Source: Kudoa neothunni (Eukaryota; Animalia; Cnidaria). From it: a stretch of DNA of 64,000 nt. This document shows, piece after piece, positions 4,911-48,621 of the stretch. Position numbers and translations under genes: made by a program. How positions within the stretch are numbered: the stretch's first letter is position 1; the number at the start of each line of letters is the position of its first letter. Location: the NCBI GenBank assembly GCA_964304625.1, contig OZ199840.1:5631200-5695199 (forward strand). Reading direction: 5' to 3'. The notes beneath the pieces are model-generated. The model was given only the letters and a program-made list of their open reading frames with translations. It made no database searches and had not been told where the DNA came from.

Positions 4911-6167
4911 TATAAAATCCGCTGTTTGTTAGTTCGTGTCGCTATGTAGGCACATTCGCAAGTAATTTTTAAAATACCAGTATTCCTAGGAGTTTAAAAT
5001 GTTATAAATGCTGAAAAATTATGATATTATCTATTATAGCGAATAGGTACTCACTAAATAAATGTACCAATACGACTGAATACTATATAGGTTATTAGTG
5101 ATTTCTCTGAGTCGACACTCTCTCATTTAATGTACGCGTATATTGTTACACTCATTAAATATGCTCAGCGACCACATTCGTCTAAAATGTGTTAAATCCA
5201 ATCTTAGATGCGAGAAAGCCGATTAGATTATCATCGTAATAGGATTACATTCGTTAATTTCGTAGAAGTAGACAATTAACATAAACTTAACGTTAATGTA
5301 CACAAATTCGACCTGATCCAACTAAAAAGTGGCCGTAAAAGCATAAATAAAAATGGAACATTAAAAAATTATGAATTCTTTGATACGCAAGTAAATTTAG
5401 ATCTATCCAGGTTAAAATGTAGAATAGTGGTCGTATTTTCCAATTAAAGATTATAATTAGTTCGTACATTAATCCTACATATTTTAAATTCATGTGATAT
5501 CTGTTGAACATCTAATGATAGGAATGAATGGATTTCATCCAACAAATTATTATTTAAATTAAAATTATACAATCGTTACAATTAGGCAGCTAATGTTTGT
5601 ATAAATAATGAAGAACCTATTCTTACAGATATGGAATCAATAATATACGATTGCTAAGGATGAAATACGACAATCGATAAAAAATCAATGTTGTCACTCT
5701 TAGATATTAGGATGAATAGAACAATCTTTACTCGATCGATTAAATGATATGGCCTGCGGAAATAACTGCGAGGGGCTAGCAGTTATATAAAGAATATATT
5801 ACAGCAACTATTATTAATAACAAATACAGTGCTGATAGTAACCTACTGGTGATGAAACAATAATAAATCCAAAAAACTAAAATAATCAATAGGTTCGATT
5901 TTTATCCTAGTCGCTTATATGGATTAGAGCCAAAATTCAACATTTTAACCCTAATATTATATAAAGCCCCGATATGATATTGGATTAACGTTACCTGCAA
6001 CATCCGAATTAACCATAATCTTAACGAATTCAGATTAATTGAAAAAAATACGTTAAGTATAAATTATTAAATAATTTATAGTAATTCTACAAGTTACATC
6101 CAAAATAGAATACGAAATATAATTTAGTGAATAAAAGTCAAAAAAAATCATGCCCCCAAAGACTCGT

Positions 6168-6239
6168 GGGGGTATAGCTCAGTGGTAGAGCATTTGACTG
6201 CAGATCAAGAGGTCCTCGGTTCAAATCCGGGTGCCCCCT
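6168..6239 (+). tRNA. trnC-GCA: tRNA-Cys (anticodon GCA), intact and intronless, 72 nt
   Basis: GGGGGTA TA GCTC AGTGGTA GAGC A TTTGA CTGCAGA TCAAG AGGTC CTCGG TTCAAAT CCGGG TGCCCCC T folds into a full cloverleaf with A and B boxes. Anticodon at 6200-6202. Confidence 0.97.
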
Positions 6240-6244
6240 GACTC

Positions 6245-6275
6245 TTTTGATTTTTAATAGTTATTTTCTTTTTTT
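6245..6275 (+). terminator. RNA polymerase III oligo-T terminator(s) for the tRNA-Cys, lying inside the retroelement 5' leader
   Basis: T4 at 6245-6248, T5 at 6251-6255 and T7 at 6269-6275, directly after the tRNA discriminator base. Confidence 0.7.
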
Positions 6276-6294
6276 GTTTAATTTGCTGAATCTA

Positions 6295-9200
6295 ATGATG
6301 CAATTTGGGACGGATTGTGAGCCGGGAACCTTGACTTCTGTGATGTCGTATTTGAGTCGTCGATATTTGGAGTGTAAAAGTAGTCGTCAAAGGATTCCTG
6401 TATTGTACAAAAGTGCAGCAGAGTATGTGAGGGTGATGGCTAGAATTTGGGATTTCCAAAAGTTGACTGAGCCACTGGACAAGAATGGTAAGGCGAGATA
6501 CAAACGTGCTCAAAACAGCAAGGAGAGGATACTTTTATCTATTGTTGAATGTCTTCAGAAAGATTTTGTTGAAGGTACTATGGATGCTGGATTAAAGGAA
6601 CTGATAGACGAGGGAGGAAGAGTACAATTGACAGCGAATTTTAAATTTGTGTTGGAAGGATATGTTTCTATATCCAATCGTATCGTCGAACAAATCGACA
6701 AAACTGGATCGCCCACTATTTCTGAAGAGAATGAAGTGAATGTTGATACTTTAACTGTTACTAGTGAACCGATAATGGTGAATTCTGGTGAGAATGTGGA
6801 CGCCGCCATTATTGACGCGCACGCAATTCCGCCATTAAATTTAAATAAAATTCAAAAAATCAGTGAAATTTTCAAGGTTTCCAATGAAAATTATCCAACT
6901 AATTCTCAAAATGATGATTCTCAAAATTCCTGTTTTTTGATTGAGAAGAGAAAACGCCCCTGTGTTCCTAGTGATGATGAATTTATTTGCACCCCAAAAC
7001 GCAAGAAGTTTATTGAATCCGATGGACAGTCAACCGACTGTGAACAAAGAGAACCATCGAAAGTTCTCACTACACAAGATATTGAGGAATTTATCAAATC
7101 AACAAGACTTGAAAATCCCGACAATTTGAGAAGTCTCTTCAAACTAGATTCTCCCGTTTTGAACGACTCAATTCCGTCTAATCATAACGAAGATTTGAAT
7201 ATCTTCATTCCCATTTCAACACCACTATCTTCAACCTTTGTCCCCGAATCAGTAGACCTAAATGAAATTAGTTTTACAGACCAACCTCCTCCAACCACCA
7301 CGTCAACTCAACAAATTCAAGCAAATCCACCTATTGTAGAAAACGCAGAAAATCGAAGTCAGCTGAATCCAGCTCCATCTTCTGAACCCGTTGAAGAATC
7401 ATCTCAATCCCAGAGAAAGAACTACAGACAACAGAAGGAAGAGCGACTCGCGAAGATCCAACATCTGTCAGAAGAACTACGAGATGTCATGGCAAGAAAC
7501 AACAACGATGACACTTTAACTATCTACTCAAAATTCATTGAGGTTGCTGTAAAAGGCGCCCAAGATGTCCAATTCTTCCAAGCCCCATACAAAAGAAATG
7601 AGAACAACCAAAATCAAAGCAGACTGCCACCTCCACTACAACTACTACAACGAAACCAAGAGTTGACTCTTAGTCAAAAACAGAAACGTTTGAGAGGACT
7701 CTATCGTCATAACCGCCAAAGATGTTTCCGTGAGATAACAGAATCCCCACCCAAATGGTGCCAACTCTCGGCAGATGAAATTGCTAGTGGACTCGCCGGT
7801 CAATTTCCTCCTGTAGTGATACCTCCACATGAAAATAGACCTACAATAGAAATATCCACTACTCAACAAAACGCAGATCCCTCCCAAAATATCTACTATA
7901 ACCCTCAACTATACGACGATTTCTATATCGAGCCTGAAGAAGTGAGACTTGTCATTGAACGAGCCAAAAGAGACAGTAGTGCTGGAACTGACGGCATCAA
8001 GATGATATTTTGGAAGAAGATCCCTCAAATCGAATATCAACTTGCTCCACTCTTCAACAAGATTCTAAAATCATCCACCATCCCACCTCAATGGCTTGAA
8101 TCACGACTCATCCTACTTCCGAAATCTGACAACCCCAACCAATTCAGTACCGATGACTATCGTCCAATATCCATCACCCAGACTATATACCGCCTCTTCA
8201 TGTCTGTTCTAAATAGGAAATTGAGAAATGGTTATGTGTCTTTTTCCAAATCACAAAAAGGTTTTGAACAATGCGATGGATGTGTTGAACACTCGTTTGC
8301 CGTCCAAGAAATTATCAATGTTGTTAGGAGATCAAACAAGAAACTGACCGCCATCTGGATCGATATCAAGAAAGCCTTCGATAGTGTTCCCCATTTCCTC
8401 ATTCTAGAATCCCTTTACAAACTCAGTGATATCCCTCCATATGTGACCCAACTAATCAAGAACTTGTATGACAGTTGCTACAGCTCCATCTCCGACAGTG
8501 ATGGAAGAAGTGCCAAAATAAAGAATGAAGGAAGGGGAGTGAGACAAGGATGTCCGTTGTCTCCTCTCCTGTTCAACCTCATTGTTGACAAATTCCTCGT
8601 CACTGTGGAACAAAGCAGCATTGGTTTTGAGCTAGAAGACAAAAAGTTTGGAGCCCTCGCCTTCGCTGATGATATTGTACTATTATCCCACACCGAAGAA
8701 GAAGCAACCAGCTTACTGCAACTATTTGAACAATTCGCCAACCAATCCCAACTCACTGTCAACGTTAACAAATGTGCTCTTTTGAATGTCAAATATCATC
8801 TTGGAAGAAGAGTTGTCAACAATATCTCTGATCATAATCTGTTCAAGCTCTCCGATCAACCCATACCATTTATGACAGACTTTTACAAATATTTAGGAAC
8901 CCACACCAATCTAACCACCTTTAAGGAAAAACTTCCTGCGATTGAGAAATTTGAAGAGAAGCTCATCAAAATAAGCGATTCCCCCCTGTTTCCATTTATG
9001 AAGCTTGATATGATGCGAATCTATCTTTTCCCTACTCTTGATCACACTCTCAAAAGTCATTGTATCCAAGTCGAAGAACTGAGGAAAACAGATGCACTTA
9101 TCAAACGAGAAGTGAGAAAATGGTTAGACCTGCCACAATCTTCGACATCCAATCTGTTCTACGTGCCAACATCGCTCGGTGGTCTTGGTCTAAGATCATT

Positions 9201-10316
9201 GGTGAATGAATATTGGGCCCTAGACTTTCATCTGGATTAAATCTACTTCATTCGAAGGACGAGAGAATTGAATCTGTAGCCAGGAAAGTCCCTATCAACG
9301 ATTATTCAGAAGAGAACCAAAAACAGACTCACCCCCATTGAATATCTGCAACTTGATAGAGAGCTAGGAAAAGTCCATGATATTCGAAGTCTTCTTTCAT
9401 CTCTTAGAACAAACAGAAAGGCATTAGATATCAAATTCAGACTTGCCGAAGAAGAATCCTCCCGAATCAATCGATCTTGACCTCGATTCTCTCAAACCAC
9501 CCTACATTAACCAAACTCCACCCTACGAACGTAATGACCAATCCTACATTAGTCGAGTGAGAAGACTAAGATGGCATATCCAATCCACATTTGTTGATCA
9601 GTGGATGTCGCAACCCAGATCAAGGAAGATCTTTTATCTGTTTTGCCGCAAATGCCCAAAGCAATTCTTGGATTAGAAATTGTCCCTTAAAGATCTCCAC
9701 CTACCGTTTTGCAGTCCGAGCAAGGATCAACGTATGCCCCACAAAAGCCGTCCTAAAGAAAGCCAAGAGTGTCCCTGATGCAAGATGTCGTCGTTGTAAT
9801 TGTGAGGTAGAAACCTTGGGGCACGTCCTCAATGGTTGTCGCTACAACACACGCCTTATTCAACATCGTCACAACACTGTTTCTGGATATCATTTCCAAC
9901 CAAATCAAGAAAAAATCCAATATCACTGTGAAAATCGACCAAACCATCTCCCACCTCCAAAGCAGTAAGAGACCCGACATCCAAATCATCGACGAGGAGA
10001 ACAAAAGGTTTTACCATTGTCGACCTGGCAATCTGCTATGAGAGCGGTCCCCAACGAATGGCTGAAGTGGGAGAAGCAAAAATCCAGAAATACTCTCCTG
10101 AAGTTATCCAGCTGCGAGAGATGGGATACCGAGCCGTAAGTGATGTGATTATTTTAGGTACTCTCGGTTCACATTATCCACAAAACGATGAAGTGTTCAA
10201 ACGCAATAAATGTGAAGAAGGCCCGAAGAAAGCAATTCCTACGCAAACTGACGGAAACCATTCTGGAACTATCGCGAGGAATTTGGGCTCACCATGTCCA
10301 AACACGTTCGTCCTGA
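6295..10316 (+). CDS. Retrotransposon protein (RT + zinc knuckle + restriction-like endonuclease); contiguous to 9240, then split by several 1-bp indels
   Basis: RT motifs SAGTDGI, W.ESRLILLPK, YRPISI, QKGF...GCVEH, WIDIKKAFDSVPH, GVRQGCPLSPLLFN, AFADDIVLL, YKYLG, GGLGL. Downstream frames give CRRCNCEVETLGHVLNGC, RHN, KRPDIQI...IVDLAICYE...KIQKY, LGTLGS and SRGIWAHH...TGA (10314-10316). First ATG at 6295. Confidence 0.9.
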
Positions 10317-10392
10317 AAACCCAAATATTTTTGTCGGCTTCAGTCCTTAGTTTTTAGTTATAAACTCAAATTGTCACTATTATATTATTGTT

Positions 10393-10428
10393 ATCAAGAG
10401 GTCCTCGGTTCAAATCCGGGTGCCCCCT
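10393..10428 (+). pseudogene. Isolated 3' half of tRNA-Cys (positions 38-73) at the junction between the two element copies
   Basis: ATCAAGAGGTCCTCGGTTCAAATCCGGGTGCCCCCT is identical to 6204-6239. The preceding bases are the element tail (tattattgtt), not the tRNA 5' half. Confidence 0.95.
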
Positions 10429-11350
10429 GACTCTTTTGATTTTTAATAGTTATTTTCTTTTTTTGTTTAATTTGCTGAATCTAATGATGCAATTTGGGAC
10501 GGATTGTGAGCCGGGAACCTTGACTTCTGTGATGTCGTATTTGAGTCGTCGATATTTGGAGTGTAAAAGTAGTCGTCAAAGGATTCCTGTATTGTACAAA
10601 AGTGCAGCAGAGTATGTGAGGGTGATGGCTAGAATTTGGGATTTCCAAAAGTTGACTGAGCCACTGGACAAGAATGGTAAGGCGAGATACAAACGTGCTC
10701 AAAACAGCAAGGAGAGGATACTTTTATCTATTGTTGAATGTCTTCAGAAAGATTTTGTTGAAGGTACTATGGATGCTGGATTAAAGGAACTGATAGACGA
10801 GGGAGGAAGAGTACAATTGACAGCGAATTTTAAATTTGTGTTGGAAGGATATGTTTCTATATCCAATCGTATCGTCGAACAAATCGACAAAACTGGATCG
10901 CCCACTATTTCTGAAGAGAATGAAGTGAATGTTGATACTTTAACTGTTACTAGTGAACCGATAATGGTGAATTCTGGTGAGAATGTGGACGCCGCCATTA
11001 TTGACGCGCACGCAATTCCGCATTAAATTTAAATAAAATTCAAAAAATCAGTGAAATTTTCAAGGTTTCCAATGAAAATTATCCAACTAATTCTCAAAAT
11101 GATGATTCTCAAAATTCCTGTTTTTGATTGAGAAGAGAAAACGCCCCTGTGTTCCTAGTGATGATGAATTTATTTGCACCCCAAAACGCAAGAAGTTTAT
11201 TGAATCCGATGGACAGTCAACCGACTGTGAACAAAGAGAACCATCGAAAGTTCTCACTACACAAGATATTGAGGAATTTATCAAATCAACAAGACTTGAA
11301 AATCCCGACAATTTGAGAAGTCTCTTCAAACTAGATTCTCCCGTTTTGAA
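10393..11350 (+). mobile_element. Second, head-to-tail copy of the retrotransposon, 3'-truncated (5' ~960 bp only)
   Basis: Matches 6204-7163 apart from two 1-bp deletions I could see (near 11021 and 11121). Identity stops abruptly after ...cccgttttgaa at 11350. Confidence 0.93.
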
Positions 11351-12360
11351 TGTATCATTTCGATTAATTCAAGATCAGGATCTAAGTGTAGTGGGTTGCC
11401 CTAATTCATACATTTTTTATTTTTCGCATCTTCTGAATCAAAATTGAAGGGTAATACATAATAATATTTCATGAGAATAAAGTATTATCTTTCTTAAATT
11501 TTAATTGTATTGCATTTTTCATGTATGTACTTCTAATTCATAATTTTCAATTTTACTCGGAAACAAATGGTATAAAGGGGGAATACTGAATGAAAAGGAA
11601 GAAAAGAATCAAATGTTAGTACAGTCTGTCACCTAAGAAAGCTAAAACTATTGCAAAAAACACGATGACATAGAAAACATTGACCAACTGGCTGGAGCAA
11701 TTTGATCTGTTAGTGACCACTAATGAGAACGATCCTCGCACACAAAAAGTCGCAACTATTGATCAAAGTTGGAGATTTTAATGATAATTAGAGAGCGAAT
11801 GGAATTTCAAAAAAATCCCGAATACTGTGAGTAGAAAACTTCCTTCGAGCTCGTTACGGGAAATATATGGACACGCACCTCAAACCGAAAAACTTCCGTA
11901 TTCGTATCCAACGATCTAGGAAGACTTATGAGGTATATATGGGCATTCCGCAATCAATCACTACGAAAGACGTTTCAGAAATGGATGAAACTGGTCTGAA
12001 CAGTTTGATAACGAATAAATTCGTCTCCAATGTTTAAAATATAGCCGTGAAAACATTCTGTTTTATTGACTATACAAATTTGATCGAATACACAACATCG
12101 ACTGCCAAAAGACATCATATGGCTCACGAAGGAGTTGTAGAGAGGGAAATCGAGCATATCGATTCAATAAGCACTTCCAAATATGAGTACGGTTGGTCCA
12201 GGACGGAGGACAGAGGTGATAAAGAAATCCCTCCAGTCAGTTGGTCACATCCAACCCCTTATTCAAGTTCCCCAACTTATGAGGGGTACAGCATCCCGAT
12301 CTGTGGAACACGCTCGCTGTGACGTACACGCACAAGACGTTGCAACTACAATAGCCACGT
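11351..12360 (+). mobile_element. Possible decayed LTR (Gypsy-like) retrotransposon remnant
   Basis: Begins with TG exactly where copy 2 stops. Fragments read WLEQFDLLVTTN (gag-like, ~11690) and TP-FELVTG/YGHAPQT (integrase C-terminus-like, ~11840-11885). Heavily frameshifted. Confidence 0.3.
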
Positions 12361-12739
12361 GATATATAATAAAAATGGCAATGTCTATTGGCCCGTACAA
12401 ATTCGGTTTATTGTATTTTTGAATTACTCATTATTTAAAATGTATATTTTCGGATTGAAATGAACGTTTAAAAATTTAATTAAGTCTCATATTGATAAAA
12501 TTTTGATTTTACTTTCTTATAAAATTAAATTATGTATTCCTCACTTGATGGTATAATTATAAATCATTGAATACAATTGAGATGTTTCTACATTCACACC
12601 AATAATAGAAACAATGGAATTGTTACATCCAAAATTTCTGATTATAGTAGGAGAAAAAGTGATTTTATTTCATATGTCTACGAGGAATGAATACCGAAAG
12701 GAATAACACAAGTCTAATAATATTATTGCTGAAAATAAT

Positions 12740-13800
12740 TTCTTCTATATTGGAGTTTCATGTAACAGTTTTGAAGAATTAAAATTGAAACTTGAGGTAA
12801 TCGAATTAAATGGTGTGCACAGTTTATCCATATCAATTTTTTAACCATTGAAACAGCAAATATTTGATGTGATAGAGTAATAAATCCTGCTATTCAATAT
12901 TATCAAATAAAATATTGTTGTATTCATGGTGGAAAAAATTAAAATTTTTAAAAACTTAATAACGTATAAATAATTACAGTAATATTGTCTATTATTTAAG
13001 AGAAACCGATCGCCTGGTAAAGGAATTCAAATTTTTCTTACAAAGAATACTCTATGTTTTTGAAATTTTAGTAGATTTTGACGGGGAAAAGCTCGTATTG
13101 AAATCACTCAGCCTTCCCCATAATCATGATTCCTTTAATTTTTCTTCAAAATTGTTATGAAATAAAAAAAAACACGATGAAGTCGATTTTATTTCTCAAC
13201 ATTTAGAAGTGAATGAAAATTCAAAGGTTATCCTAGATATGTTGTTTCGAGAAAAAGGAAAGCTTATTTCTCTAAAAAAATTAATCAACATGAAATATTC
13301 AATGAAATCCCACTCAAAGAAAGTAGAATTTTTACAAAATCTAAAAAAGAAACAAGACATATGGATAGAAATACTGGAAAAGGTTTATCTTTCCAAGTTT
13401 TAAGCGGATAAAAAAGCCTTGATGCATACCCAGAAATTATTTTAATCGATGCTCCCTAAAAACTACTAGATTTCAGAGCTCCTGTATATTTTGGTGACAT
13501 TATAGACTCCGGAGGAACAACTGAGATAGTAGCGACCTGAATACTTTAAGAAGAATCCTAAGGAAGTTCCACTTGGCTTATTAAAAAAATAAAACATAAT
13601 AATGAAAACTAACATGAAAGTCTTTATTATGGAGGAAGACATAGATGAACGAAAAGTCATAAAACAAATTTTTATGACCGCAGATTTGCAAATGTTTGTA
13701 TCATGTTCTAAAGTATTTCAGTCTTGTTTTAATGTTTCAGATTACATGCAACATCAGTCATGGGAACAACTTTGTGATGCGTAATATAAAAATTTGATCC
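12740..13800 (+). pseudogene. Decayed Mutator/MULE (ZSWIM-like) transposase
   Basis: Broken-frame motifs in the expected order: YYQIKYCCIHGG (~12900), HNHD (~13120), AYPEIILIDA..KL...PVY (~13425), VFIMEEDIDERKVIKQIF..ADLQ.CLYHVLKYF (13620-13720, CxxH motif). Confidence 0.7.
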
Positions 13801-15010
13801 CAACATTTTTTAAATTAAATTACCAATAAGTAGTTATATATCGGGAATTGTCAAACAATATTTTAATTATGGATTAAAGTTAGAGGATGGATAATCAGAT
13901 GCTAACATGTTTATTCAGAACGTAATATTTGAATTAATATTATCAAAATTACACTTTAAATACAAACTCTAAATAAGTGAGTATATAAATAATCATAATT
14001 TATTTGTGTTCAATTATGGTATAAATTACAGAATTAATGTTGAGACTAAAAAAAATAAATATTTCATCATTTACTATAATTGAGGGATTCCATATAGAGG
14101 TTATCGTCAAAAACGTCAACATTGGGCATTCAGTGCTCTTTAAAGTTTTTGCGCTGATGAGAATCAGTACAATAACTTGAATCCGCATAAAAAGTTTATA
14201 ACTATAAACGATATGGTTTATAGTGAATTTTGTATGCCAACAACATCATATTGTATTGTATATAGAGCTATGAGGTACCCTGATGATAAAAATTATAAAA
14301 ATAATTCATTAAAAAATTAAAAATGAATCTATTAATAAACCAGATCGTCTATTGTATTAAATTACAAGAATAATAATGTTTTATTTTTCCTAAGTAACGT
14401 CGTTTAACACATGTACCCACCGAACAAAATCCTTCATTTTTACATATTAATATATAATCTACTATGGTATTTTTTAAGGGATCGTAATTTAAAACAGATT
14501 GCTTAACAACAGCAAACCGAATTTAAAAGGGGCCAATAGACGCTGCTAATAAAAATCCAATATTTAAAATATAGATTATCCATCACTGAAACATTGTCAC
14601 GTCGAATGGAATTTTTGATAAACATGAAAAAATTCTGGAAGCTTATGAGAATATCATGCTTCCTATGAAAACAAAATCAATAAGAAAAGGACATGATACA
14701 GACACTGATTAGTGTGTTTACGAATAGTTTCATCGGATTCGATCAAAAAATATAGCAATTTCGCCCCACGAAATCTTTAATAAGAGGAATGGAATCGGTT
14801 TATCTGAGAATAAAGAATTTAAAAATATGGTATGATTGATGTAGAACAGGGGTTATTAACTGTTTTTTGTAAATGTACCCCCTTAACTTTGAAGCTAAAT
14901 TCATATTACTTTAGGTTGTATATTCACTTAAGTATTTTTAGGCAACATTTCTGCCAACATCTTAATTGAGTTTAACGGGCTGAATAATACAACTCCCTAG
15001 AAATCCTTAA

Positions 15011-16163
15011 ACCTTTGGAGCACACATGGGGCCCAATGGATCCCATGTGGGTTTAATTTAGCCTAAACACTTAACTGGAGTCATCTTTTGCTTTACAAAA
15101 ATGTTACTCGCATATCTTTGTTTATTTAACACCTGTTTTTAGAGAACAGATAGATTTTAAAAAAATTTTTAGACGTGAAAATGGCAGTTCAAATGTGTCA
15201 GACATGGAATCTTGTAGCCGTAATTTTTGTTATGATAATTTATTTGCGTTTATAAAGCAATAAAACCAGTTCCGAATATTAAAAAAGTAATAATCAAGAT
15301 GATTTAATTACACATGATTCAATAGGAGAAATTTTGAAGTCCGTCGATGAGAGGCTTTGTGGTAAAAAATCCGAATTGTCTGTTTACCCTGTGAAATCAT
15401 TTTCTAAAAAGAGGAAACACAACATCGATATCCTTGATGATGTTATTAAGGAAAATGACACTTGAAATTAATTTTTTATGGATAAAATATTAAACAGTAT
15501 AGTTAGCTCTACGAATAGTTTATCCAATATAACTTTAAATTTTAAAATTTCGTTAGTTTGTTAAGCTCATTATATTATTGGCCAATAATAAATTTACAAC
15601 ATCCATAAAACTCCTAGAAATTATTTCATTTTACAAAAGGAGGAATAGGCACAATTGATATAATTTTTGTTAATTGTTTAACCAATCGAACAACGAAAAG
15701 ATGGCCAGCGGTTATGTTCCACACTTTTTTAGATATTGTGTCAATAAATGCACATGCATTATACTATGCGATAGCAGAGACCCCAGTCCGAAGGAAAGAC
15801 TTCTTGAAATTGTTTTGTATGCGATTTAAAGAAGAGTAATTGAATAAAACGATAAAAAATAATATAAAATAATTTAGAGATTTTATAGAAGCGATAAATA
15901 TAAATTGAATGCAATAATCTAACTCTATTTCGAAAAAACGGCGTTATCTCTGTGTTTGTCAAAACGAAAGAAAAACGATAATACATTGTTTAACTGCTTA
16001 AATTCGTTTTATAAATAACTCTCAACAATATATGAAATAATTGTTTCCAAAAGTAATTATTTACAATAGTATGCTACAAATTAAACCAATCTTACCGCTT
16101 GAGGTCCATTGGACCAAATGCGTGCGGGCTTCGAGTAATATTTTTTGTGCATATTCCGGAGGG
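15011..16163 (+). mobile_element. Internally deleted piggyBac transposon
   Basis: TTAA at 15007-15010 and 16164-16167, ends ACCTTT.../...GAGGG, and a subterminal inverted motif (gcacacatggggcccaatgga vs rc gcacgcatttggtccaatgga). Residual transposase reads TKRWPAVMFHTFLDIVSINAHALY (~15693-15765). Confidence 0.8.
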
Positions 16164-17749
16164 TTAAGTACGTAACAAACCGCATTATAAAAAAATTTCA
16201 AATATCCAATTTAAATAGCTCTTAATTTACCCCATACTATCAAAAATTACTGATCTAATTGGTAAAACATTTGTACCTTAGTTCGAAGGTTACTAGTTAA
16301 ATAATAATCCGGTACGACGACGTTAATTTAAAATGAATTAAAATAATATGAATCGCTACATTTAAGGTGAAGAACATAATTATTTACATTTAAAAATATA
16401 GTAAATTTAAAAATGAATCAACGGTGCATTTTTGTGACGTTTATTTGCGCAAGTGCACAGAACAGGAACAATTATGCCGGATATACTTTGAATAGCGTGA
16501 GAAATTGGAAATAAATTGTTTTATTATTGCTTCATTCTTCAAATTTCCTTCTTATAATTATTTTAACAGATAAGGTTCGGTTTTGTTCTTAAAATCCATG
16601 ATTTTATAATGAAATCTCTTCCACTGTTGATAGAAATATGTTAAATATACAAATTCGTACTTAATAAATTGAAATTTGGCATTATAAATGAATTTATGAA
16701 TAAAAAATATATATAGTCTAAGAATTTTTAGACTATATATTTTTAAGTTATGATATGATGGTCTAAATAAAACTTTGAAAAACTATATTTAACTTACTAC
16801 ATTTCGTTGACAAGTGATTAAAAAAATTATTATAATACGCGCGATTCACATGTCAACTTAAATTAGTTAACAGAATCAAGTTGTAATAAAAACAACAAAA
16901 TGAATTTAAAAATATTCCTCCCTTCAGAATACATTTATACTGTTTATTTTCTTGCGAAAAAGTTTTTTACGTATTTTTACTATATAAACGCTATTATTTA
17001 TATTTTGGGCAAATTTAGGTATGCGTGTAACTTCTTTTTATCTAAAGTGAAAAAATAAAACGTACAACTCCATTATTTAAGAAGTTTTACAAGCACTATT
17101 ATAACATAGAATACACGCGGGGAAAAAAGAAATAAAATAATTTCTAAAAGGTGCTGATATAATATATAATAAGCGCTGACTGTTCATCCCCCAGATATTC
17201 GAGGGTAAAAAAGCCCATTCTGACTCCACAATGGAATATGTATCATAAAACGTAAGTTAAACAACCTCACTCATCGCAAGACACATGGTAAATTATTACC
17301 ACTATAGTTATTTAAATTTATTATCATTGCTTTCTAAAGAATACTTAGTTAGCATTTTTATTAAAATTTTTCTCGTGATCATCATATCAAGAACTTCAGA
17401 TCACTGCTCAGGCTCTACTTTATTAATTATAGCCCATTTAGTCGATAATTGATCCATTCATAAAATAACCAAAAATCTCAATTAACCCCACACCTTATCA
17501 AAAGATGATATTTGGGGTATATTATGAATCACATCGAAAATAACTCAACGAAATGTTCACAATTCAACTATCCAGGAAATCAGACACAGCCTTTAAAAAT
17601 AACTCGATGGGCTAATTAAAGCAGCCCATCAAAAAAGAATTAATAAAATGTAATATTTTCAATAAAGAGAAAAATTGCTTGAAATTTTAATCGGAGATGA
17701 ACAAAACAACAACAACAACTTATCGTAATGTAGAACAACTAATGATCTT

Positions 17750-19854
17750 TTAATTTTTTATTAAATCGATAGGTGCAGGCTTAACAAATTTGACAAATTT
17801 CATGTTATCTGGAATGTAAGGATGAAGACATTCGGGCAATCGGATGCCATCCTCCTCTTGGAAATTCTCCAATAGACAACATATAGTCCTTGTGGTAGCA
17901 CACATAGTAGCATTCAACATATGGACAAAGTCCACCTAAAATATCAACATATCAACATAACATATCAACGTTAAAGAACCGAATCATCAGTATAATTCAA
18001 ATACATCCTTGTTGAGTTTTTTTGTTTGGCCGAAACGAATAGAAAGACGGCGAGATTGATAGTCAGTGCAATTTGAGCAGGAGACCAATTCTTTGAATGA
18101 TTTGCTTCCAGGAAACCAAGCTTCAAGGTCGAGTTTTTTCGCAGCAGCATTATTGAGATCGCCAGATGGAATGTTGATTACTCTGAATGGTATTCCTAAT
18201 GTTTCATAGAATTGCTTTGCATTTCCAATCATTTCGTCAAACATTTCCCACGAAGTTGTAGGCGAGGTCACACAAAATTGTTCCACCTTCTCAAATTGAT
18301 GCACTCTGAAAATGCCGGTGGTGTCTCTACCATGAGAGCCGACTTCTTGTCGAAAACAAGTTGAAAGACCGGCGTATTTTAGTGGAAGTAGCGCAGGATC
18401 AATCCACTCATTTTGATGGTAGGCAGCAATGGGTTGTTCACTAGTAGCAATGAGATATTTATCTTCAGTTTTGGTGTCATTTTTGTCCTCGCTTTTGGTG
18501 GTCACCTAAAAAATGGCAGGTGGTGTGTCGATATACAACAACAACAACAACAACAACAACACATCGAACTCACCTTATACAATTCTTCATCGAATTGGTT
18601 GAGCTGGGCGACACGACTCATCGAGTCTTTGTTCATGAAAAAAGGAGTGTACAATGGGTTGAATCCTTTGCTGTAGAGTAGTTTCAACGCTAGTTGTATC
18701 AAAGCTTGTTCGATGAACACAGCGGCTCCCTAACCAAACGAAATAATTAAATTCGAACTAGGTTGCCATTAAAATCAATATACTTTGAGGAAATAACCTC
18801 TATTACCAGCCACTCGATTTCCACGCTCGTAATCAACACCATCAATCATCACTAGCAGATCAACATGAGAATATTTCTTCACAGATTCAACGTCTCCTGA
18901 AAGAGTAACAACCTCGGTGACTTCCTAATATATATATGGACATTCGGTTAAATGTAAACCCAAACTAATTTTTACATCTTCACGGGCAACTGGAACAGAT
19001 GGGTGAATGATATTTCCAATCTCATATATAATAGCACTTCTTTCACTTTCCAACTCGATTAGTCTCCTATTTGCTTCAACAATGTGTTTATCAATTGAAC
19101 CTTTAACGTTTTTAATGGTGGCAATATTGAGAGTCTATTGGTTGTCGTTAATTTTTCAACACACACACAATTTGTTATTGGAGTCAATAGCCAAATTAGG
19201 GCAAAAACTAACATGAGTAAAGTGACCCAGATTAATTTTCACAGCCACAAAGGCTAGGTGGTTACTGTTTAGGTTTTAGTTGCTTGTAAAATTTAAAATT
19301 TGGATAGTGAAAATATTGAAAATGGTTGTTATTAGATTTTAATTTATTTATAACATTAAAATAAAGTACACTAAAAATTATACAATATAAATAGGTGAGG
19401 TCCAAATTGTTCAATGTTATGAGAGTTAATCCAGGTTAATTCAACAAAAAAATTCCATCCTATAAATTACCCTGGCGAAATCGTTGGTAAAATCAATAAT
19501 TTGTTGTTTCGATAGAGCGTTAGATGAGTCGAATTCACCTTGGGGCTCTTTTTTCTACGATCGATCCATCGATTATAGTTATTGAAGGTAAAAATCGAAT
19601 GTGTGTACTTTCATTTTTTCGGCCACAGTTTTGCTACAAATATTCTTTGATTTGTTGTATGCATCAACCTCAAATCGCACTATCGAAAATAAACACAAAC
19701 TCCAACCATTCAAAAAACCTTTGCGCCACAGCTCATCAATTTCAATCACTTTGTCGACAACACTTGGATCTTTGAATCTTTTGCGTTGATTCTCACGAAT
19801 TAACTCCGGATTCCCACCTTTCTCAGCTCTGAAATAATTGATATCAAGTACCAT
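17750..19854 (-). CDS. SARS1: Cytosolic seryl-tRNA synthetase, multi-exon
   Basis: N-terminus [29 protein letters not shown]; [14 protein letters not shown]; [27 protein letters not shown]; [16 protein letters not shown]; [17 protein letters not shown]. Short GT-AG introns. Confidence 0.97.
18534..18562. repeat. (CAA)n microsatellite inside a SerRS intron
   Basis: acaacaacaacaacaacaacaacaacac. Confidence 0.9.
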
Positions 19855-20536
19855 CTTTCTCGCTCGGAGGCTAAACAATCCAGTCGATATCAATTGGGAT
19901 CGTGTAAATATCGACCACGTGTAGTTCATAAAAGGAACAATCGATTTTTCACGAGAATTGGAGAGGCGTTGAAAAGTTTGATGTGTGCTGAGAACTCATG
20001 CCTAGTATGCACAATTAAGATTTATTAAAAATTAATTCCTCAAATTATGTAGCTGTCACTTCTTAGTGATCTTTAAAGACAGTTTTAATAACCGACAAAT
20101 TTTTTTCTTTCGTGAAATTTTGATCGAGACTACATTCTAATATTCGATCGTAAACATAGTTTCAATTGTGGTGTTAATAAAATGGTAGAATAAATTTTAA
20201 TAAAATTTAACGCCTGCGTCAAGTTATTTGTTTTAATTTCTAGTTACTAGTTGGTTGAATATAGTTCTGAATTTCCGTTAGTTAATTCAAATAATTATGT
20301 AAAAAAATTTAATGCGTATAAAGTCCAAGTTTTATTGAGAATCAATGTACGATGACTAGTAATGAGGTGTTAAAACACCGCCCCTTTTTCCTGGGGCACT
20401 CACGTTCGAGTCCCACCTACGATACCAATTCAGCAGAGAATATAAAGGATATTTTAGAGGAAGATGTAATACAGTTGGGGTAGGGTATGCAAGGATTTGA
20501 TTTTATGCCGCGTTTAACTTTAATGATATGGCTTAA

Positions 20537-23236: not shown

Positions 23237-25170
23237 ATGGAAAGCACTCCACCATCCACCCCGCAAAGAGGTAATAAGATACACAATAAGATTTTGCGTC
23301 AAAAACCATCATACCAATATATTTAATTTGTTGGAATTGGATAATTCATGGAATAATAATAAAAATAATAATAGTGGCTGGGTAAAGCCGCATCTGCTTT
23401 TACTATTGTTATTACTAGTAGAATTGTTCAATAATTTTAGGTGAGAAGAGAAATAGCAATGGGATCAACCAACTCGGGGGAATGTTCGTGAATGGTAGAC
23501 CACTACCTACGACTACTAGAATAGAAATAGTTCAAATGGCTTTGAATGGTGTTCGTGCTTGTGATATTTCGAGAAAGTTGCGAGTCTCACATGGATGTGT
23601 TTCGAAAATCCTAGACAAATACTACGAGACTGGCTCGATTCTGCCAGGTCTTATAGGTGGTAGTAAACCAAAGGTAATCGCATAATCGCATGAATGATTG
23701 GTTCACTTTACACCCAACCAACTATGCTAGATTTGTTACGCAAACACACACACACACACACACTTACTTTCTTACTTACTTACTTACTTACTTATTTGCT
23801 TATTTGCTTTTACATAGGTGGCCACAGATGGAGTTGTCAAAAAAATTCTTCATTACAAGTGCGAAATGCCTACCATATTTGCGTGGGAAATCCGAGAAAG
23901 ATTGCTCAAGGAGAAAATCTGTTCCAAGGACAATGTGCCAAGTATCAGCTCAATCAACCGAATTGTGAGAACAAGACTATCTCGAATCAAAAATGATAGC
24001 AAGTCAGGCGGCAGCGGAAATAATAATTTCGGATGCTCAATCGTCCCCAACCAGCACCACCCCTCTAAATTGTACCCCGCACAGTTAATGCCTGATAACG
24101 AATTTTTCACTAACCAACAACTTCTCAATAATATATGTGTCAGCGGATTTAATTCCAACAACGGAGACACTTTTAGTCAACCTTATCAAGGTAGCTGTTA
24201 TAATTACATCCACATGAACAACGATCCAATGTACATAAACATGGCCGCTGGGCACCCGTTGCCACCCACCCAACAGTCAACATTATCTTTCTATCACCCC
24301 ACCCCATCGGCAACCATCCAAATGGATTCCAATAAACAAACATTTGAATCTAACAAGTTTGTGTGCTGTTTTCGGTATTTCTTGTCTATTTTGAATTTAG
24401 TTTTAATGCCCAACAATTTCCACCCATGAATAGAAGCCGTTTTGTTGTCCAAAATAACTTCGATCCCAATCAAAATCACGTAAACTTATTCTATTTTTAA
24501 TAGCTTTATGTAACGGAATGTATAATAAATACCTACCAACGAATATAGTTAAACCCATATGGAGATGGATGTCGAAATGGTGACAATGCTATTGGCAATA
24601 ATAAAAAATCTCAAAACAACACATTCAACGATAATAGTTTTATTCAATTAATATTCCAGATAACAATAGTATTATTTAGTGAAGTTTTTGCCATTTTAAG
24701 CATGTAATTATTTAGATTACTCTGGTGGAGCTGTTACGAACAGTTTCCCCTACGATAACAGAAATTATTTTTATTGTAACGATGACAGGTCTACAAATAG
24801 AACCGATTTCAATAATATCAACCCACCTCAAATAATCCCTTTTCCCATATATGAGACCATGAACAATCAAAACCTCCGTAATCGCATATAAATTATGTTA
24901 ACCCTTCTACATAATACCTATTTAGAACTACCAAGCAACATCAACTACAATACAATAAACAACTTTAGCGGTTCTTATAGTTTGTCAGGTATTATCTCTT
25001 ATTTAAAAAATACTGGAAGATCTGTTATTTTCCTTTTAGATATCTCGTTGAATCAATCCACGGTTGCTAGTGAAAATGATATCCATCCGATTTCTAACCA
25101 AAATCGATCGTCTTTTCCTGTGTTCAACACCGATTCATTGGCCATCAAACACGATCATTCGTCTCTCTAG
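23237..25170 (+). CDS. Paired-box transcription factor with no homeodomain detected (cnidarian PaxA/poxn-like or Pax2/5/8/B-derived)
   Basis: Exon 23237-23270 ([11 protein letters not shown]), exon 23441-23673 ([16 protein letters not shown]...[34 protein letters not shown]), exon from 23818 (VAT...[13 protein letters not shown]...[12 protein letters not shown]). Followed by N/Q/P/S-rich exons whose 3' boundaries are approximate. Confidence 0.9.
23744..23806. repeat. (CA)n plus (CTTA)n compound microsatellite in the Pax intron
   Basis: acacacacacacacacacac ttactttcttacttacttacttacttactta. Confidence 0.9.
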
Positions 25171-37198: not shown

Positions 37199-38200
37199 TT
37201 TATAAACTATTATCACCTTATGATCAAAATGATACAAACTTAAAATCTAAAATATTGATCAAGAAAAAACTGTAAAAATTAATTGTTGCTATTAGTTATT
37301 ATTTTATATTAGATATAACAAGTATTGAACCGATATTAAAATTATTTATTTTTTGAAACATAAAAAACCTTGAGCGTAAATTCTTAGTCAGAAGTATATA
37401 AATATCGTTAGTTGATTATTTGAGAGTAAGTGAAGAAATATGTATTGTCAATAATGTATGAAATCTACACGTTGATAATGGTCTGTTGGTATTATTTTGA
37501 TTGAGAATAGAATATTTTATACAATTAGTTTCGTATAAATGAATTAATGAAATCTTAGATTATTTCTAATCATTAATCCAAAAATTATATTATATGTTCA
37601 AGCTACAATGTAACATCCAGTAATTATCAAATAATACTCACATTATATCAGATATAGACTCTAGAATTGATAAATTATATATATTATCAATTATAAGAAT
37701 CCAATATAACCACATGTATTGAATAAATTTAACAGTAGAGTGAAATAATGCTATCACTTTCTTCTATTTTACTTATGTAGATTATAACTATAAACGAATT
37801 TTTAATACCAAAACATTTATATTGAATGCCAGTAAGATCATCATCCGTATTTTCACTAAGGATTATATTGAAAAATTTCATTAAAACATTTATATATTTC
37901 ACACGCGAATTGTTAGAAGGTTATTAAATAATTAATTTTACGTTATTAGATATATAATAGAAATAAAAAATCATATTCGACTATGCGTAAAAGATATATT
38001 GTTTGTTCTACATATTAATCTCATTTGGAAACTTTTTTGGAACCTTTATTTTATATATTTGGGATGTTATGTTCGAATGAGTGCATACGAATGTGATTCG
38101 CTCATATTTAAACCTTATTGTGCTGTTAATGAATGGGAATTAAGGGCAAGTCTATATCATGTCGAACAAAGACGATATAGCCCACAACGACTAACTTAAA

Positions 38201-39519
38201 ATGAGAACTCTATTGTCTATAATTCTCCTTTTCAGCTCACTTTATTTAGATCAACTTGCTAGTATTCATAAGCTTAATTATACAAATTAAATATATTATA
38301 GGAATAGCCTTCGCAGATTACTCATTAAATGAGGGAGTTTGTCCTCACGAAGCAGGACAAACAGTTGATACAACTTGCTTTAAATTTGACAGATGGTACA
38401 TTGATGCAGCCACTCGAGAGTGCAAACCATTCAAATATAAAGGATTTGGTGGAAACTTTAACAACTTTGCTACTGAGAAACAATGCAAAGATCATTGTAT
38501 ATCTATTAATTTACACATATAGAATATAAATATAATTAGTCACTATTACTCCTAACGATAAAGCAAAGGGATGTTCAGAAGATGCTGCTAAGTCTGGGGA
38601 ATGTGGACCAACAACCGGTGTAACAAAATGGTCATATTACCCAGGGGAATCAAATGGAGAATGCAAATCATTTACATATAAAGGGTGTGGAGCAAGCAAT
38701 AATGTTTACGATAGCCAGGAAGAATGTGAGGGATATTGCAAAAGTAACAACTTTATATTGATGAATAAATGTATTTGTTTAATTTAGAGGAACATTCAGC
38801 GATTAATAAATATGATTGTCATGTGAAGCCTGAGATAAACGATAGTAGCCCACAAACTGGTATAATAGCACACACGAAATATCGTCGTTGTGTATACGCG
38901 GCGGTTCAAAATGACAATCATAAGAATGCATGGAGTACAACCAACCCCAGGCCCCGAGGAGTCTTCAAATCATTCCAAGAGTGTGTGAAAACATGTTATC
39001 GTAGCTTATTAGAGAATAAATTAATCTTTATTTTAAAAATCTAGCAACTGAGGATAAAAAAATTCCAGCCTGTAGAACTAACACACCTCACATATTCCCT
39101 AAATCAGATTCAGCGTGGAAAAATAATAATGTGGTAGTTCGATATTATTACAATAAAGGCGAAAATAAATGCCACCGGATGGAGAGTTGGCCTGGAGAAT
39201 TCAACCCAAATAACAATATTTTCGGGTCTAAGGATTTGTGTTTGAGTTATTGTGGAGGTAATAATTAAAATAATTGTTGAATATCAAATGAGATATTACA
39301 GGTGTAGACGAGGATTTTGAAACTGCTGAAAATATATGTGAGATGAGTGTTGAATCAGTATATGACGAAAAGAATGAAAATACCAAAGGAAATCTAAATG
39401 TAACGAGATATTATTATTCTCAATCAGACCAAACATGTACACCTTTTCAATATGGAGGCGTTGGAGGAAACGGAAACAACTTTTTAACAAATGCGGTTTG
39501 TGAAAAAGTGTGCAAATAA
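38201..39519 (+). CDS. Secreted five-Kunitz-domain protein, copy 1
   Basis: Signal exon MRTLLSIILLFSSLYL, then one Kunitz/BPTI-like domain per exon (RWY...CKPFKYKGFGGNFNNF..C..C; FTYKGCGASNN; RYYY...FQYGGVGGNGNNF). Short phase-1 introns. Confidence 0.88.
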
Positions 39520-48510: not shown

Positions 48511-48621
48511 CGACGAACTTTCATAATAAAATAGGGATATAAAATACGAACAGTTTTTTGATATCTTAATATCACATATTTACCTTTTAATATTTTATTC
48601 TATTTTATCTTATAGTTATTA

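What the first reader, a model, noticed from the sequence alone, without database searches (positions are those of the whole stretch)
6168..10428. tRNA-Cys-targeting RLE non-LTR retrotransposon that leaves its target tRNA intact
Seen: the layout is tRNA 5' half (6168-6203), tRNA 3' half + oligo-T + RT/CCHC/RLE ORF + short tail (6204-10392), then the tRNA 3' half again (10393-10428) heading a second copy. Known: RLE-type elements insert by target-primed reverse transcription into fixed sites in multicopy RNA genes (R2 in 28S, R8 in Hydra 18S, NeSL in SL RNA, Utopia in U2 snRNA, YURE in a Ciona tRNA) and normally disrupt that copy. Inference: this element nicks tRNA-Cys in the anticodon loop and restores the 3' half with its B box, either by carrying it at its own 5' end or by an unusually long (36 bp or more) target duplication. 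The host would keep a working tRNA, paralleling bacterial phages whose attP replaces a tRNA 3' end. I know of no described tRNA-Cys-specific family of this kind but cannot search to confirm novelty.
Basis: partly seen in the sequence, partly recalled or inferred. Interest (0 to 1): 0.95.

Follow-up and report, generated by a model that had tools for sequence, protein, structure and literature searches.

The report
Retrotransposons that rebuild their tRNA target
A decayed jumping gene sits directly behind the genome's only detectable cysteine-tRNA gene; it belongs to a family whose members each occupy a different, mostly single-copy tRNA gene, entering at the anticodon loop yet leaving a complete tRNA gene in front of them.

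Summary
An intact tRNA-Cys (6168-6239) is followed by a 4.2-kb RT/CCHC/RLE element. After the element's 3' end comes an exact second copy of the tRNA 3' half (10393-10428), then a 958-bp 5' fragment of a second copy.

- This Cys copy is dead (one in-frame stop, at least four frameshifts) and is the only Cys-family locus.
- The same 40-Mb, three-chromosome genome holds related elements, many with intact ~1,800-aa ORFs, behind 15 other tRNA genes.
- Wherever a 3' junction was recovered (12 tRNAs), it lies at tRNA position 36-40. The tRNA in front is always complete.
- The genome has about one tRNA gene per anticodon. Cys, Phe and Gln-TTG each have a single intact gene, and it is the occupied one.

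The elements form one clade beside Utopia/NeSL-like elements. Relatives in two metagenome assemblies and on a stray contig of a fish genome assembly carry tRNA 3' halves too, matching the Asn, Lys and Gln targets of their G000 relatives where placed. How the tRNA is rebuilt is unresolved: a long staggered-cut duplication or an RNA-borne copy.

First-stage readers noted the same design at a tRNA-Lys array on this chromosome. I found no published description.

The parts
6168..6239 (+). Intact tRNA-Cys(GCA), the head of the locus. Its 5' part (6168-6203) is unique; its 3' part (6204-6239, with the B box) is the duplicated module.
   Evidence: ARAGORN. Rfam tRNA 70.3 bits. The only full match of this tRNA in the 40-Mb genome.
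6240..6294 (+). Trailer and 5' UTR. It holds two T-runs (6245-6248, 6251-6255) that look like a Pol III terminator for the rebuilt tRNA. The first ATG of the long frame is at 6295.
   Evidence: Sequence. Every sister family starts with the same kind of double T-run. Native trailers of unoccupied tRNA genes look alike. Frame analysis.
6295..9240 (+). N-terminal region plus reverse transcriptase, in one frame that ends in a premature in-frame stop at 9238-9240. The RT domain is about 8119-8799.
   Evidence: the ORF listing. Pfam RVT_1 E=2.7e-34 at aa 625-851. Homology to intact relatives continues past the stop to 9456.
9470..10316 (+). Broken C-terminal part: linker, CCHC zinc knuckle (about 9786-9839) and the remains of the restriction-like endonuclease, spread over frames 3, 1, 3, 1 (at least four frameshifts).
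   Evidence: tblastn of four intact sister ORFs. zf-RVT E=3.2e-7 on the piece 9591-9968. The RLE is identified in the intact relative by alignment to R2 structures.
10317..10392 (+). 3' UTR. It ends in a degenerate version of the AT-rich terminal motif (TATATTGTATTATT-like) shared by the sister families.
   Evidence: Alignment of nine 3' ends. Junction listing.
10393..10428 (+). Second copy of the tRNA 3' half (nucleotides 37-72), directly after the element's 3' end. This marks the 3' junction, that is the inferred bottom-strand nick site.
   Evidence: 100% direct repeat. The half is the only other match of the tRNA in the genome.
10429..11350 (+). 5' fragment of a second element copy (trailer, 5' UTR, first ~300 codons). 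It is identical to copy 1 except for two 1-nt deletions and ends abruptly in unrelated DNA.
   Evidence: Local alignment. Sequence at the break.

Best explanation
[quoted passage not shown] The clade lies beside Utopia/NeSL-like elements. Each lineage is tied to one tRNA gene.

Inferred life cycle:
1. The ORF protein nicks the bottom strand of its cognate tRNA gene in the 3' side of the anticodon loop (tRNA position 36-40).
2. It primes reverse transcription of the element RNA from that nick.
3. The finished insertion carries, in front of the element, a fresh copy of everything from the nick to just past the tRNA's Pol III terminator.

The result is: complete tRNA + terminator, then element, then an orphan 3' half. 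Because the target is rebuilt, it can be hit again. That gives head-to-tail arrays and lets the elements live in tRNA genes present once per genome.

My preferred version of the rebuilding step (about 45%) is a long target-site duplication. The top strand is cut some 50-65 bp downstream of the bottom-strand nick, beyond the terminator. Second-strand synthesis is then primed where the T-rich trailer, or a resident element's 5' region, anneals to the end of the cDNA.

Status of each step:
- Shown: the architecture, its recurrence, the phylogeny, and the single-copy status of three targets.
- Inferred: the nick position, target-primed reverse transcription, tRNA function, and the rebuilding step.
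- Confidence: identity and target regeneration about 0.9; the staggered-cut version about 0.45.
For: Architecture
- In the window.
- The same layout occurs behind 15 more tRNA genes: Gln-TTG, Gln-CTG, Asn, Ser-AGA, Lys-TTT, Lys-CTT, Thr-TGT, Thr-AGT, Phe, Val-CAC, Val-AAC, Ile, initiator-like Met, elongator Met, Trp.
- 3' junctions were recovered for 12 of the tRNAs and fall at tRNA position 36-40. All duplicated halves run to the tRNA end, including the 45-nt half of long-armed tRNA-Ser.

Protein
- RT, CCHC and RLE are homologous to solved R2 proteins (E=3e-77, C-terminal stretch aligned).

Phylogeny
- All genome copies plus four metagenome proteins form one clade (SH-aLRT 99-100).
- An exhaustive search of 1.84 billion representatives finds only six members, then a drop to 33% identity or less.
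- Target is conserved across species. The relative on contig L055 carries an Asn half and is sister to Asn_1. L059 carries a Lys half and is sister to Lys-CTT. L057 carries a Gln half and falls inside the Gln group. L090 is a three-unit array with an initiator-Met-like half.
- Purifying selection acts between species: pN 0.17 against a saturated pS of 0.75.

Single-copy targets
- Cys, Phe and Gln-TTG each have one intact gene, the occupied one.
- 36 typed tRNA genes show about one gene per anticodon.

For a locus-derived duplication
- The two distant Asn lineages share the trailer up to the end of the second T-run within this genome. They share a different trailer within L055. The sequence after the T-run follows the lineage. 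The boundary is the same for the two Lys-TTT lineages.
- Relatives make long duplications. Planarian LIN15_SM in tRNA-Arg has a 5' flank reaching about position 65 and a 3' flank starting about position 25. A 28S element on L061 has roughly 170 bp duplicated. Reptile Utopia duplicates 20 bp.
Against: - No read-level or RNA evidence was obtained.
- The Cys family itself gives one locus only, and its copy is dead. Its targeting is therefore argued from sister families.
- Against a plain staggered cut: none of roughly 28 array units is 5'-truncated, although a duplication would protect the tRNA even then.
- The duplicated stretch ends 15-22 nt past the tRNA, tracking the T-run rather than a fixed distance.
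- At Met, Ile and the end of the Asn array, the trailer behind the complete tRNA differs from the trailer behind the last half, although the halves are identical or differ by 1-2 bases.
- In the Gln array, variant halves travel with the downstream unit.
- No N-terminal zinc fingers or Myb were found, so how the DNA is recognised is unknown.
- Three weaker RT loci were not tied to a tRNA: one examined upstream without finding a tRNA, two not examined.
Confidence: 0.8

Rival explanations
1. Same element and same target, but the tRNA is rebuilt from RNA rather than by a staggered DNA cut. There are two versions. (a) The element RNA is a co-transcript that carries the tRNA, or its 3' half, plus the trailer at its 5' end. 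(b) The reverse transcriptase, on reaching the 5' end of the element RNA, switches template onto the Pol III pre-tRNA, which ends at the terminator. In both versions the end of the cDNA is complementary to the tRNA and pairs with the cut target.
For: - No 5'-truncated unit among roughly 28. Only full-length cDNAs would restore an essential gene.
- The shared module ends at the Pol III terminator in three independent lineage pairs. This fits version (b).
- Trailers behind the head tRNA differ from trailers behind the last half at Met and Ile, while the halves are identical or nearly so.
- In the Gln array, variant halves go with the downstream element.
- In the Lys-TTT lineages the long ORF is open from an ATG inside the T-arm. 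In one of them no other ATG precedes the conserved N-terminal motif. This fits version (a).
Against: - Version (a) predicts lineage-specific trailers, but trailers are shared within a locus and differ between species.
- No ribozyme or other known RNA family was found in the 5' regions.
- The T-runs would stop Pol III, and no promoter was identified.
- There is no precedent for obligatory template switching onto a pre-tRNA. Long duplications do have precedents among relatives.
Confidence: 0.4
2. The tRNA belongs to the element rather than to the host. On this view it is a LINE with a tRNA head used as a promoter, like a SINE head, inserted at arbitrary sites. The downstream halves would be by-products of tandem duplication.
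For: The tRNA and the element are always contiguous. The halves carry the B box.
Against: - Each head tRNA has a different anticodon. Together with the unoccupied genes they make one non-redundant set.
- Cys, Phe and Gln-TTG have no other gene.
- Each family occupies one locus.
- Loci with a single full-length element also end in a half (Phe, Met, Ile).
- The 5' half is never duplicated.
Confidence: 0.03
3. The Cys locus is only a DNA-level tandem duplication or an assembly artefact next to a tRNA gene, with no targeting involved.
For: - The two copies differ by only two 1-nt deletions over 958 bp, although copy 1 is heavily decayed. The second copy therefore probably arose by DNA-level duplication or conversion, not by a fresh retrotransposition.
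Against: - The repeat boundary falls exactly at the position used by the sister families.
- The same design appears in independent assemblies.
- Three sequencing runs of one study (one sample) hold 87-92% of the stretch's sampled words. They may be the source data, so this is weak.
Confidence: 0.05

Closest known systems
Utopia and NeSL (RLE non-LTR retrotransposons specific for U2 snRNA genes and spliced-leader genes; Kojima and Jurka 2015, PMC4640811)
   Same: - Single ORF with RT, CCHC knuckle and restriction-like endonuclease.
- Precise 3' junction inside a small-RNA gene.
- Tandem arrays joined by target fragments.
- Low-copy targets.
- In my trees the tRNA clade is sister (SH-aLRT 99) to a group holding an element that sits in a U2 array (L056), oomycete RNase H+RT elements and a Ulp1-protease-bearing element.
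   Different: - Identity is only 27-33%.
- No N-terminal zinc fingers, no Ulp1 protease and no RNase H.
- The target is a tRNA.
- Utopia leaves disrupted U2 copies lacking their first 38 bp. Here a complete target gene always remains.
LIN15_SM, LIN25_SM (planarian) and NeSL-1_TV (Trichomonas): RLE elements specific for tRNA-Arg, tRNA-Glu and tRNA-Pro
   Same: - Insertion inside a tRNA gene, in the same orientation as the gene.
- LIN15_SM ends in an AT-rich 3' tail resembling the terminal motif seen here.
- Its published flanks overlap by about 40 bp, which is a long duplication within the tRNA.
   Different: - The LIN15_SM 3' flank starts near position 25, not 37.
- Its upstream flank stops near position 65, so the tRNA is not restored.
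- Its hosts have multicopy tRNA genes.
R2 and R9 (28S rDNA-specific RLE elements)
   Same: - The RT-to-RLE region aligns to solved R2 structures (E=3e-77).
- Target-primed reverse transcription is established for R2.
- R9 is reported to make an exceptionally long duplication (title cited).
- A 28S element with roughly 170 bp duplicated is among the hits (L061).
   Different: - The target there is a multicopy rRNA gene, and insertion inactivates the hit copy.
- R2 has N-terminal zinc-finger and Myb domains.
- R2 proper falls in the other half of the tree.
Phages and integrative elements that integrate into bacterial tRNA genes and carry a replacement 3' end (own knowledge)
   Same: Functional analogy: insertion inside a tRNA gene with restoration of the 3' part, so that an essential, conserved site can be used safely and repeatedly.
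   Different: Those use DNA recombination by integrases. There is no reverse transcription, they are prokaryotic, and the restored part is clearly element-borne.
Homing endonuclease genes in introns, and tRNA-proximal retrotransposons (Dictyostelium TRE, yeast Ty3; own knowledge)
   Same: They exploit a single-copy or essential locus without destroying it. The tRNA-proximal elements use tRNA genes as safe landing marks.
   Different: - Homing endonuclease genes rely on splicing to spare the host gene.
- TRE and Ty3 land outside the tRNA and use APE or integrase enzymes.
- No APE domain is present here.

Membership tests
RLE-type (R2-like) non-LTR retrotransposons | Non-LTR-type reverse transcriptase in a single long ORF | tested here: met
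   RVT_1 E=2.7e-34 in the window ORF. Sister ORFs of 1,645-1,901 aa carry RVT_1. They align to R2 structures.
RLE-type (R2-like) non-LTR retrotransposons | CCHC zinc knuckle followed by a PD-(D/E)xK restriction-like endonuclease at the C-terminus | tested here: met
   zf-RVT was found. The C-terminal 230 aa of the intact Gln-family ORF align to the knuckle and RLE of R2. In the window copy the region is present but frameshifted.
RLE-type (R2-like) non-LTR retrotransposons | Sequence-specific, precise 3' junction with the target | tested here: met
   About 30 junctions in 12 tRNA species, all at tRNA position 36-40.
RLE-type (R2-like) non-LTR retrotransposons | N-terminal zinc-finger and/or Myb DNA-binding domains | tested here: not met
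   No Pfam hit in the ~1,000-aa N-terminal regions. No C2H2 pattern was found. The atlas feature search was blank.
Utopia / NeSL | RT phylogeny places the element inside the group | tested here: inconclusive
   The tRNA clade is sister (SH-aLRT 99) to a group containing a U2-array element, oomycete RNase H+RT elements and a Ulp1-bearing element. No named Repbase references were available, and the clade is separated by a long stem (0.56-0.83).
Utopia / NeSL | Target is the U2 snRNA gene (Utopia) or the spliced-leader gene (NeSL) | tested here: not met
   The targets are tRNA genes.
Utopia / NeSL | Accessory domains: N-terminal zinc fingers, Ulp1 protease (NeSL), RNase H (oomycete Utopia) | tested here: not met
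   None found by Pfam or pattern search.
Planarian tRNA-specific LIN lineage (LIN15_SM) | Insertion inside a tRNA gene with a long duplication and an AT-rich 3' tail | tested here: inconclusive
   The published junctions show these traits, but at another position (about 25 and 65) and without restoring the tRNA. The 3' tail motif is similar.
Planarian tRNA-specific LIN lineage (LIN15_SM) | Protein phylogeny with LIN/R5 | not testable with these tools
   No LIN/R5 protein sequences were at hand. A flatworm (Paragonimus) hit has 30% identity.
R2 proper | Insertion at the conserved 28S rDNA site | tested here: not met
   No rRNA is present at these loci. The element falls in a different half of the tree.
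APE-type tRNA-proximal elements (TRE-like) | Apurinic-like endonuclease; insertion outside the tRNA coding region | tested here: not met
   No Exo_endo_phos domain was found. The junction lies inside the tRNA.

The most novel reading that the evidence does not exclude
These retrotransposons break the rule that site-specific elements need multicopy targets. On this reading they behave like homing elements in single-copy, essential tRNA genes. They rebuild the gene at each insertion by letting the reverse transcriptase continue from the element RNA onto the gene's own Pol III pre-tRNA. That would explain three observations: the rebuilt module ends at the terminator, it is locus-specific rather than lineage-specific, and no 5'-truncated copies exist. 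The functional 3' halves and terminators of two-fifths of this organism's tRNA genes would then be products of reverse transcription.
Probability: 0.25. Interest if true: 0.95.

Novelty: new variant of a known kind. Interest (0 to 1): 0.85.

Why it matters
Site-specific retrotransposons are thought to survive by hitting multicopy genes and sacrificing the copy they hit. Kojima and Jurka called even low-copy U2 targeting hard to explain.

Here a whole clade lives in tRNA genes present about once per genome, including the only Phe, Cys and Gln-TTG genes and an initiator-like Met gene. It does so by leaving a complete gene plus terminator. This matters in four ways.
- It gives a eukaryotic, RNA-based counterpart to phage integration into tRNA genes.
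- It predicts homing-like spread into empty alleles.
- It shows repeated switching between tRNA targets within one protein family (16 targets, with two lineages sharing Asn and two sharing Lys-TTT). That makes the basis of target choice testable.
- R2-type proteins are being developed for gene insertion (one search lists such reviews). A natural variant that inserts without destroying its landing gene would be of practical interest.

Tried and rejected
One exception by oversight: the Rfam scan of 6300-64000 covered, by reference, the identical 36-nt copy at 10393-10428. Later work on these bases was local scripts only.
- No RNA run holding the stretch was found.
- Ribozyme or other known RNA in the 5' or 3' regions: none found.
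- N-terminal domain: no Pfam hit, no zinc fingers, atlas blank. Structure prediction was not attempted, because conservation there is about 20%.
- Organism identity. SL1 RNA search was blank but uninformative. Contig ends carry no telomere repeats. cox1 is very divergent with 8 in-frame TGA. Kunitz-domain genes suggest an animal.
- Using array order as a time record was rejected. Identical units are interleaved with divergent ones in the Gln array, so unequal crossing-over must have shuffled it.
- Phe as a clean single insertion was rejected. The DNA after its last half is an 81%-identical remnant of an older element's 5' region.
The broken Cys ORF was only compared piecewise.


Full report
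OBSERVATION

The window holds one tRNA gene, tRNA-Cys(GCA), at 6168-6239. From tRNA nucleotide 37 (6204) onward the sequence is repeated exactly at 10393, 4189 bp downstream. The unit 6204-10392 has these parts:
- the tRNA 3' half;
- a trailer with T4 and T5 runs;
- a 997-aa frame with an RVT_1 domain;
- a stretch with a CCHC knuckle;
- a short 3' UTR.

Two details differ.
- The ORF is broken. Four intact sister proteins align in frame 2 up to 9456, across a stop at 9238-9240. The alignment then continues in frames 3, 1, 3, 1 up to 10304.
- The second copy is only a 5' fragment. It is identical to copy 1 except for two 1-nt deletions, and homology stops near 11350.

THE CYS ELEMENT IS ONE OF MANY

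The Cys 3' region and the tRNA-Cys sequence each occur only at this locus in the 40.26-Mb assembly, which has three chromosomes and an 18-kb contig. The RT does have 66 matches of 35-55% identity (69% for one 26-residue piece) elsewhere. Many lie in arrays with a period of about 5.6 kb and ORFs of 1,645-1,901 aa.

Every array or single element that I could examine begins directly after a complete tRNA gene on the same strand. The 16 occupied tRNAs are Gln-TTG, Asn, Ser-AGA, Lys-TTT, Thr-TGT, Phe, Val-CAC, Lys-CTT, Ile, Thr-AGT, Val-AAC, Gln-CTG, an initiator-like Met, Trp, an elongator Met, and Cys.

Wherever the 3' end of an element was recovered, it abuts its own tRNA's sequence from position 36-40 to the tRNA end. 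For tRNA-Ser, with its long variable arm, the duplicated half is 45 nt and still runs exactly to the end. All elements start with two T-runs like those behind unoccupied tRNA genes. Three weaker RT loci were not tied to a tRNA. One was examined upstream without finding a tRNA. Two were not examined.

THE TARGETS ARE NOT MULTICOPY

- Whole-genome searches find one intact gene each for Cys, Phe-GAA and Gln-TTG. In each case it is the occupied one, plus its orphan halves.
- Thirty-nine tRNA genes were located, and 36 of them were typed.
- Each anticodon appears about once. No anticodon of an occupied gene recurs among the 20 typed unoccupied genes.
- The census is incomplete, since only 63 of 2,556 first-look candidates were scored.
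- The head tRNAs score 54-71 bits against Rfam tRNA.
- It is an inference, though a strong one, that they are the working genes.

WHAT KIND OF ELEMENT

The RT-to-C-terminus of an intact Gln-family ORF matches solved R2 proteins (E=3e-77). A second aligned stretch covers the zinc knuckle and the restriction-like endonuclease. Pfam sees RVT_1 and zf-RVT, but nothing in the ~1,000-aa N-terminal region. There are no C2H2 fingers.

In RT trees, all copies from this genome plus four metagenome proteins form one clade (SH-aLRT 99, stem 0.83). With the longer RT-RLE alignment, a subset (five intact genome ORFs plus two metagenome proteins) is again one clade (SH-aLRT 100). That clade is sister (SH-aLRT 99) to a group that includes the following:
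- an element lying in an array with U2 snRNA fragments;
- oomycete RNase H+RT elements;
- a Ulp1-protease-bearing element.

This is Utopia/NeSL-like company as described by Kojima and Jurka. R2 proper lies in the other half of the tree. An exhaustive HMMER search of 1.84 billion representatives finds six clade members at 48-82% identity, then nothing above 33%. The clade is therefore rare and well set apart.

THE DESIGN IS CONSERVED IN OTHER ORGANISMS

| Contig | Source | tRNA half carried | Position in tree |
|---|---|---|---|
| L055 | metagenome | tRNA-Asn half every 4,954 bp | sister to the Asn_1 lineage |
| L059 | metagenome | ends in a tRNA-Lys half | sister to Lys-CTT |
| L057 | metagenome | tRNA-Gln half at both ends | inside the Gln group |

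A 12.8-kb unplaced contig of assembly GCA_027704905.1 carries three tandem units joined by an initiator-Met-like half. A preprint lists that assembly as the fish Muraenolepis orangiensis. The half differs from what I recall of the vertebrate initiator tRNA, so the contig may come from an associated organism. This is an inference.

Between the Gln element here and its metagenome counterpart, pN is 0.17 while pS is saturated at 0.75. The ORF has therefore been kept functional over a long time at the same target.

Target switches also occurred. The Lys-TTT and Asn arrays each hold two distant lineages, and Asn_2 groups with the Ile and Met elements.

HOW THE tRNA IS REBUILT

The 3' junction is determined by the upstream element. 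In the Lys-TTT array the half starts at position 39 after one lineage and at 40 after the other. This is what target-primed reverse transcription from a bottom-strand nick predicts. The rebuilding of the head is less clear.

Evidence that the rebuilt module comes from the locus:
- In this genome the two Asn lineages share the trailer up to the end of the second T-run. In L055 their counterparts share a different trailer. The sequence after the T-run follows the lineage.
- The tRNA T-stem also differs between the two species, yet is the same in both lineages of each.
- The boundary is the same for the two Lys-TTT lineages.

This argues against a half that is simply inherited with the element. 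It fits either a long target duplication or copying of the pre-tRNA. Long duplications have precedents:
- The published flanks of planarian LIN15_SM in tRNA-Arg overlap by about 40 bp.
- A 28S element among the hits duplicates roughly 170 bp.
- Reptile Utopia duplicates 20 bp.

Evidence against a plain staggered cut:
- No unit among roughly 28 is 5'-truncated.
- The module ends at the terminator, 15-22 nt past the tRNA, rather than at a fixed distance.
- Trailers behind the head and behind the last half differ at Met and Ile.
- Variant halves in the Gln array go with the downstream unit.

At Ser, identity between the head unit and the next unit is complete for 115 nt and then decays. This suggests that the 5' junction forms by annealing to a resident element's 5' region.

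I therefore favour a staggered top-strand cut beyond the terminator, with homology-assisted second-strand priming (about 45%). RNA-borne restoration comes next (about 40%, of which pre-tRNA template switching is about 25%).

THE CYS LOCUS ITSELF

Copy 1 is decayed, yet copy 2 shows no substitutions against it. Copy 2 therefore more likely arose by DNA-level duplication or conversion than by a new retrotransposition. The Cys lineage looks extinct, leaving a dead element as the permanent neighbour of a complete tRNA-Cys gene.

UNEXPLAINED

At all four loci with one full-length element (Cys, Thr-TGT, Ser, Phe), the last half is followed by a 5' fragment of another copy and never by a 3' fragment.

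LITERATURE

tRNA-specific RLE elements are known: NeSL-1_TV, LIN15_SM and LIN25_SM. Targets of such elements are described as multicopy, and the hit copies as disrupted. Seven full-text searches found no description of target-regenerating insertion into single-copy tRNA genes. Repbase Reports and subscription journals were not searchable.

EARLIER NOTES AND LIMITS

First-stage notes of this scan describe the same design at the tRNA-Lys-CTT array 2.26 Mb upstream. I confirmed its head tRNA and one junction.

The one oversight is that one search covered their 36-nt duplicate by reference.

Noticed in passing
window 38151-48540: Three tandem, diverged copies (66-94% identity; spacing 6.1 and 2.9 kb) of a gene segment whose exons encode Kunitz/BPTI domains (E down to 2e-14). 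This points to an animal genome.
   Followed up: partly
window 17987-18505 (-): A 172-aa exon with a class II aminoacyl-tRNA synthetase core domain (PF00587, E=1.5e-39). Apart from the retrotransposon, it is the longest ORF found in the part listed (5000-20000, ORFs of 150 aa or more). No other ORF in the window reaches 220 aa, so the genes here are split into short exons.
   Followed up: no
L043:8330-8399, L014:196-265(-), L025:126-195(-), L020:3974-4043, L019:162-231(-): The 3' UTRs of most sister families end in a shared AT-rich motif (TATATTGTATTATT-like). It is preceded by a 4-bp palindromic hairpin with a 3-5-nt loop. This is a candidate recognition element for the reverse transcriptase, and it resembles the published 3' tail of planarian LIN15_SM.
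   Followed up: partly
L061:9397-9562 and 14565-14675: A metagenome rDNA unit carries a related RLE element (30% identity) in the 28S gene. 28S model positions 967-1124 lie before it and 955-1062 after it. That is a target duplication of roughly 170 bp, as reported for rotifer R9.
   Followed up: partly
L056:4226-4733, 20099-20196, 24802-24944: A 25-kb metagenome contig with four tandem RT ORFs (33% identity to the window RT) separated by U2 snRNA 5' fragments. This is a Utopia-like array, next to 47-bp and 32-bp satellites.
   Followed up: partly
L090 (GCA_027704905.1, contig JANIIK010003181.1): Three tandem units (period 4,265 bp) of a clade member joined by an initiator-Met-like tRNA 3' half. 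They lie on an unplaced contig of an assembly that a preprint lists as the fish Muraenolepis orangiensis. The contig may come from an associated organism rather than from the fish.
   Followed up: partly
L062 (G000:C4:2716-3945, -): The 18-kb fourth contig carries a very divergent cox1 with eight in-frame TGA codons. It is a mitochondrial genome with TGA read as Trp, from a fast-evolving lineage.
   Followed up: partly
L037 (-) around 448 and L038 (-); also L048: In the tRNA-Lys families the long ORF is open from an ATG inside the tRNA T-stem. In one Lys-TTT lineage no other ATG precedes the conserved N-terminal motif. If that ATG is used, the mRNA must include part of the tRNA half.
   Followed up: partly
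L058:3540-3600: On one short-read metagenome contig, the end of one ORF runs straight into the 5' UTR of the next unit, with no 3' UTR or tRNA half between them. This is either a deletion or a collapsed assembly.
   Followed up: no
G000:C2:687909-688179 and C2:698377-698647: Two identical tRNA-Gly(GCC) genes with identical trailers lie 10.5 kb apart. Among the 36 typed genes, this is the only anticodon confirmed to occur twice. It looks like a recent segmental duplication.
   Followed up: no
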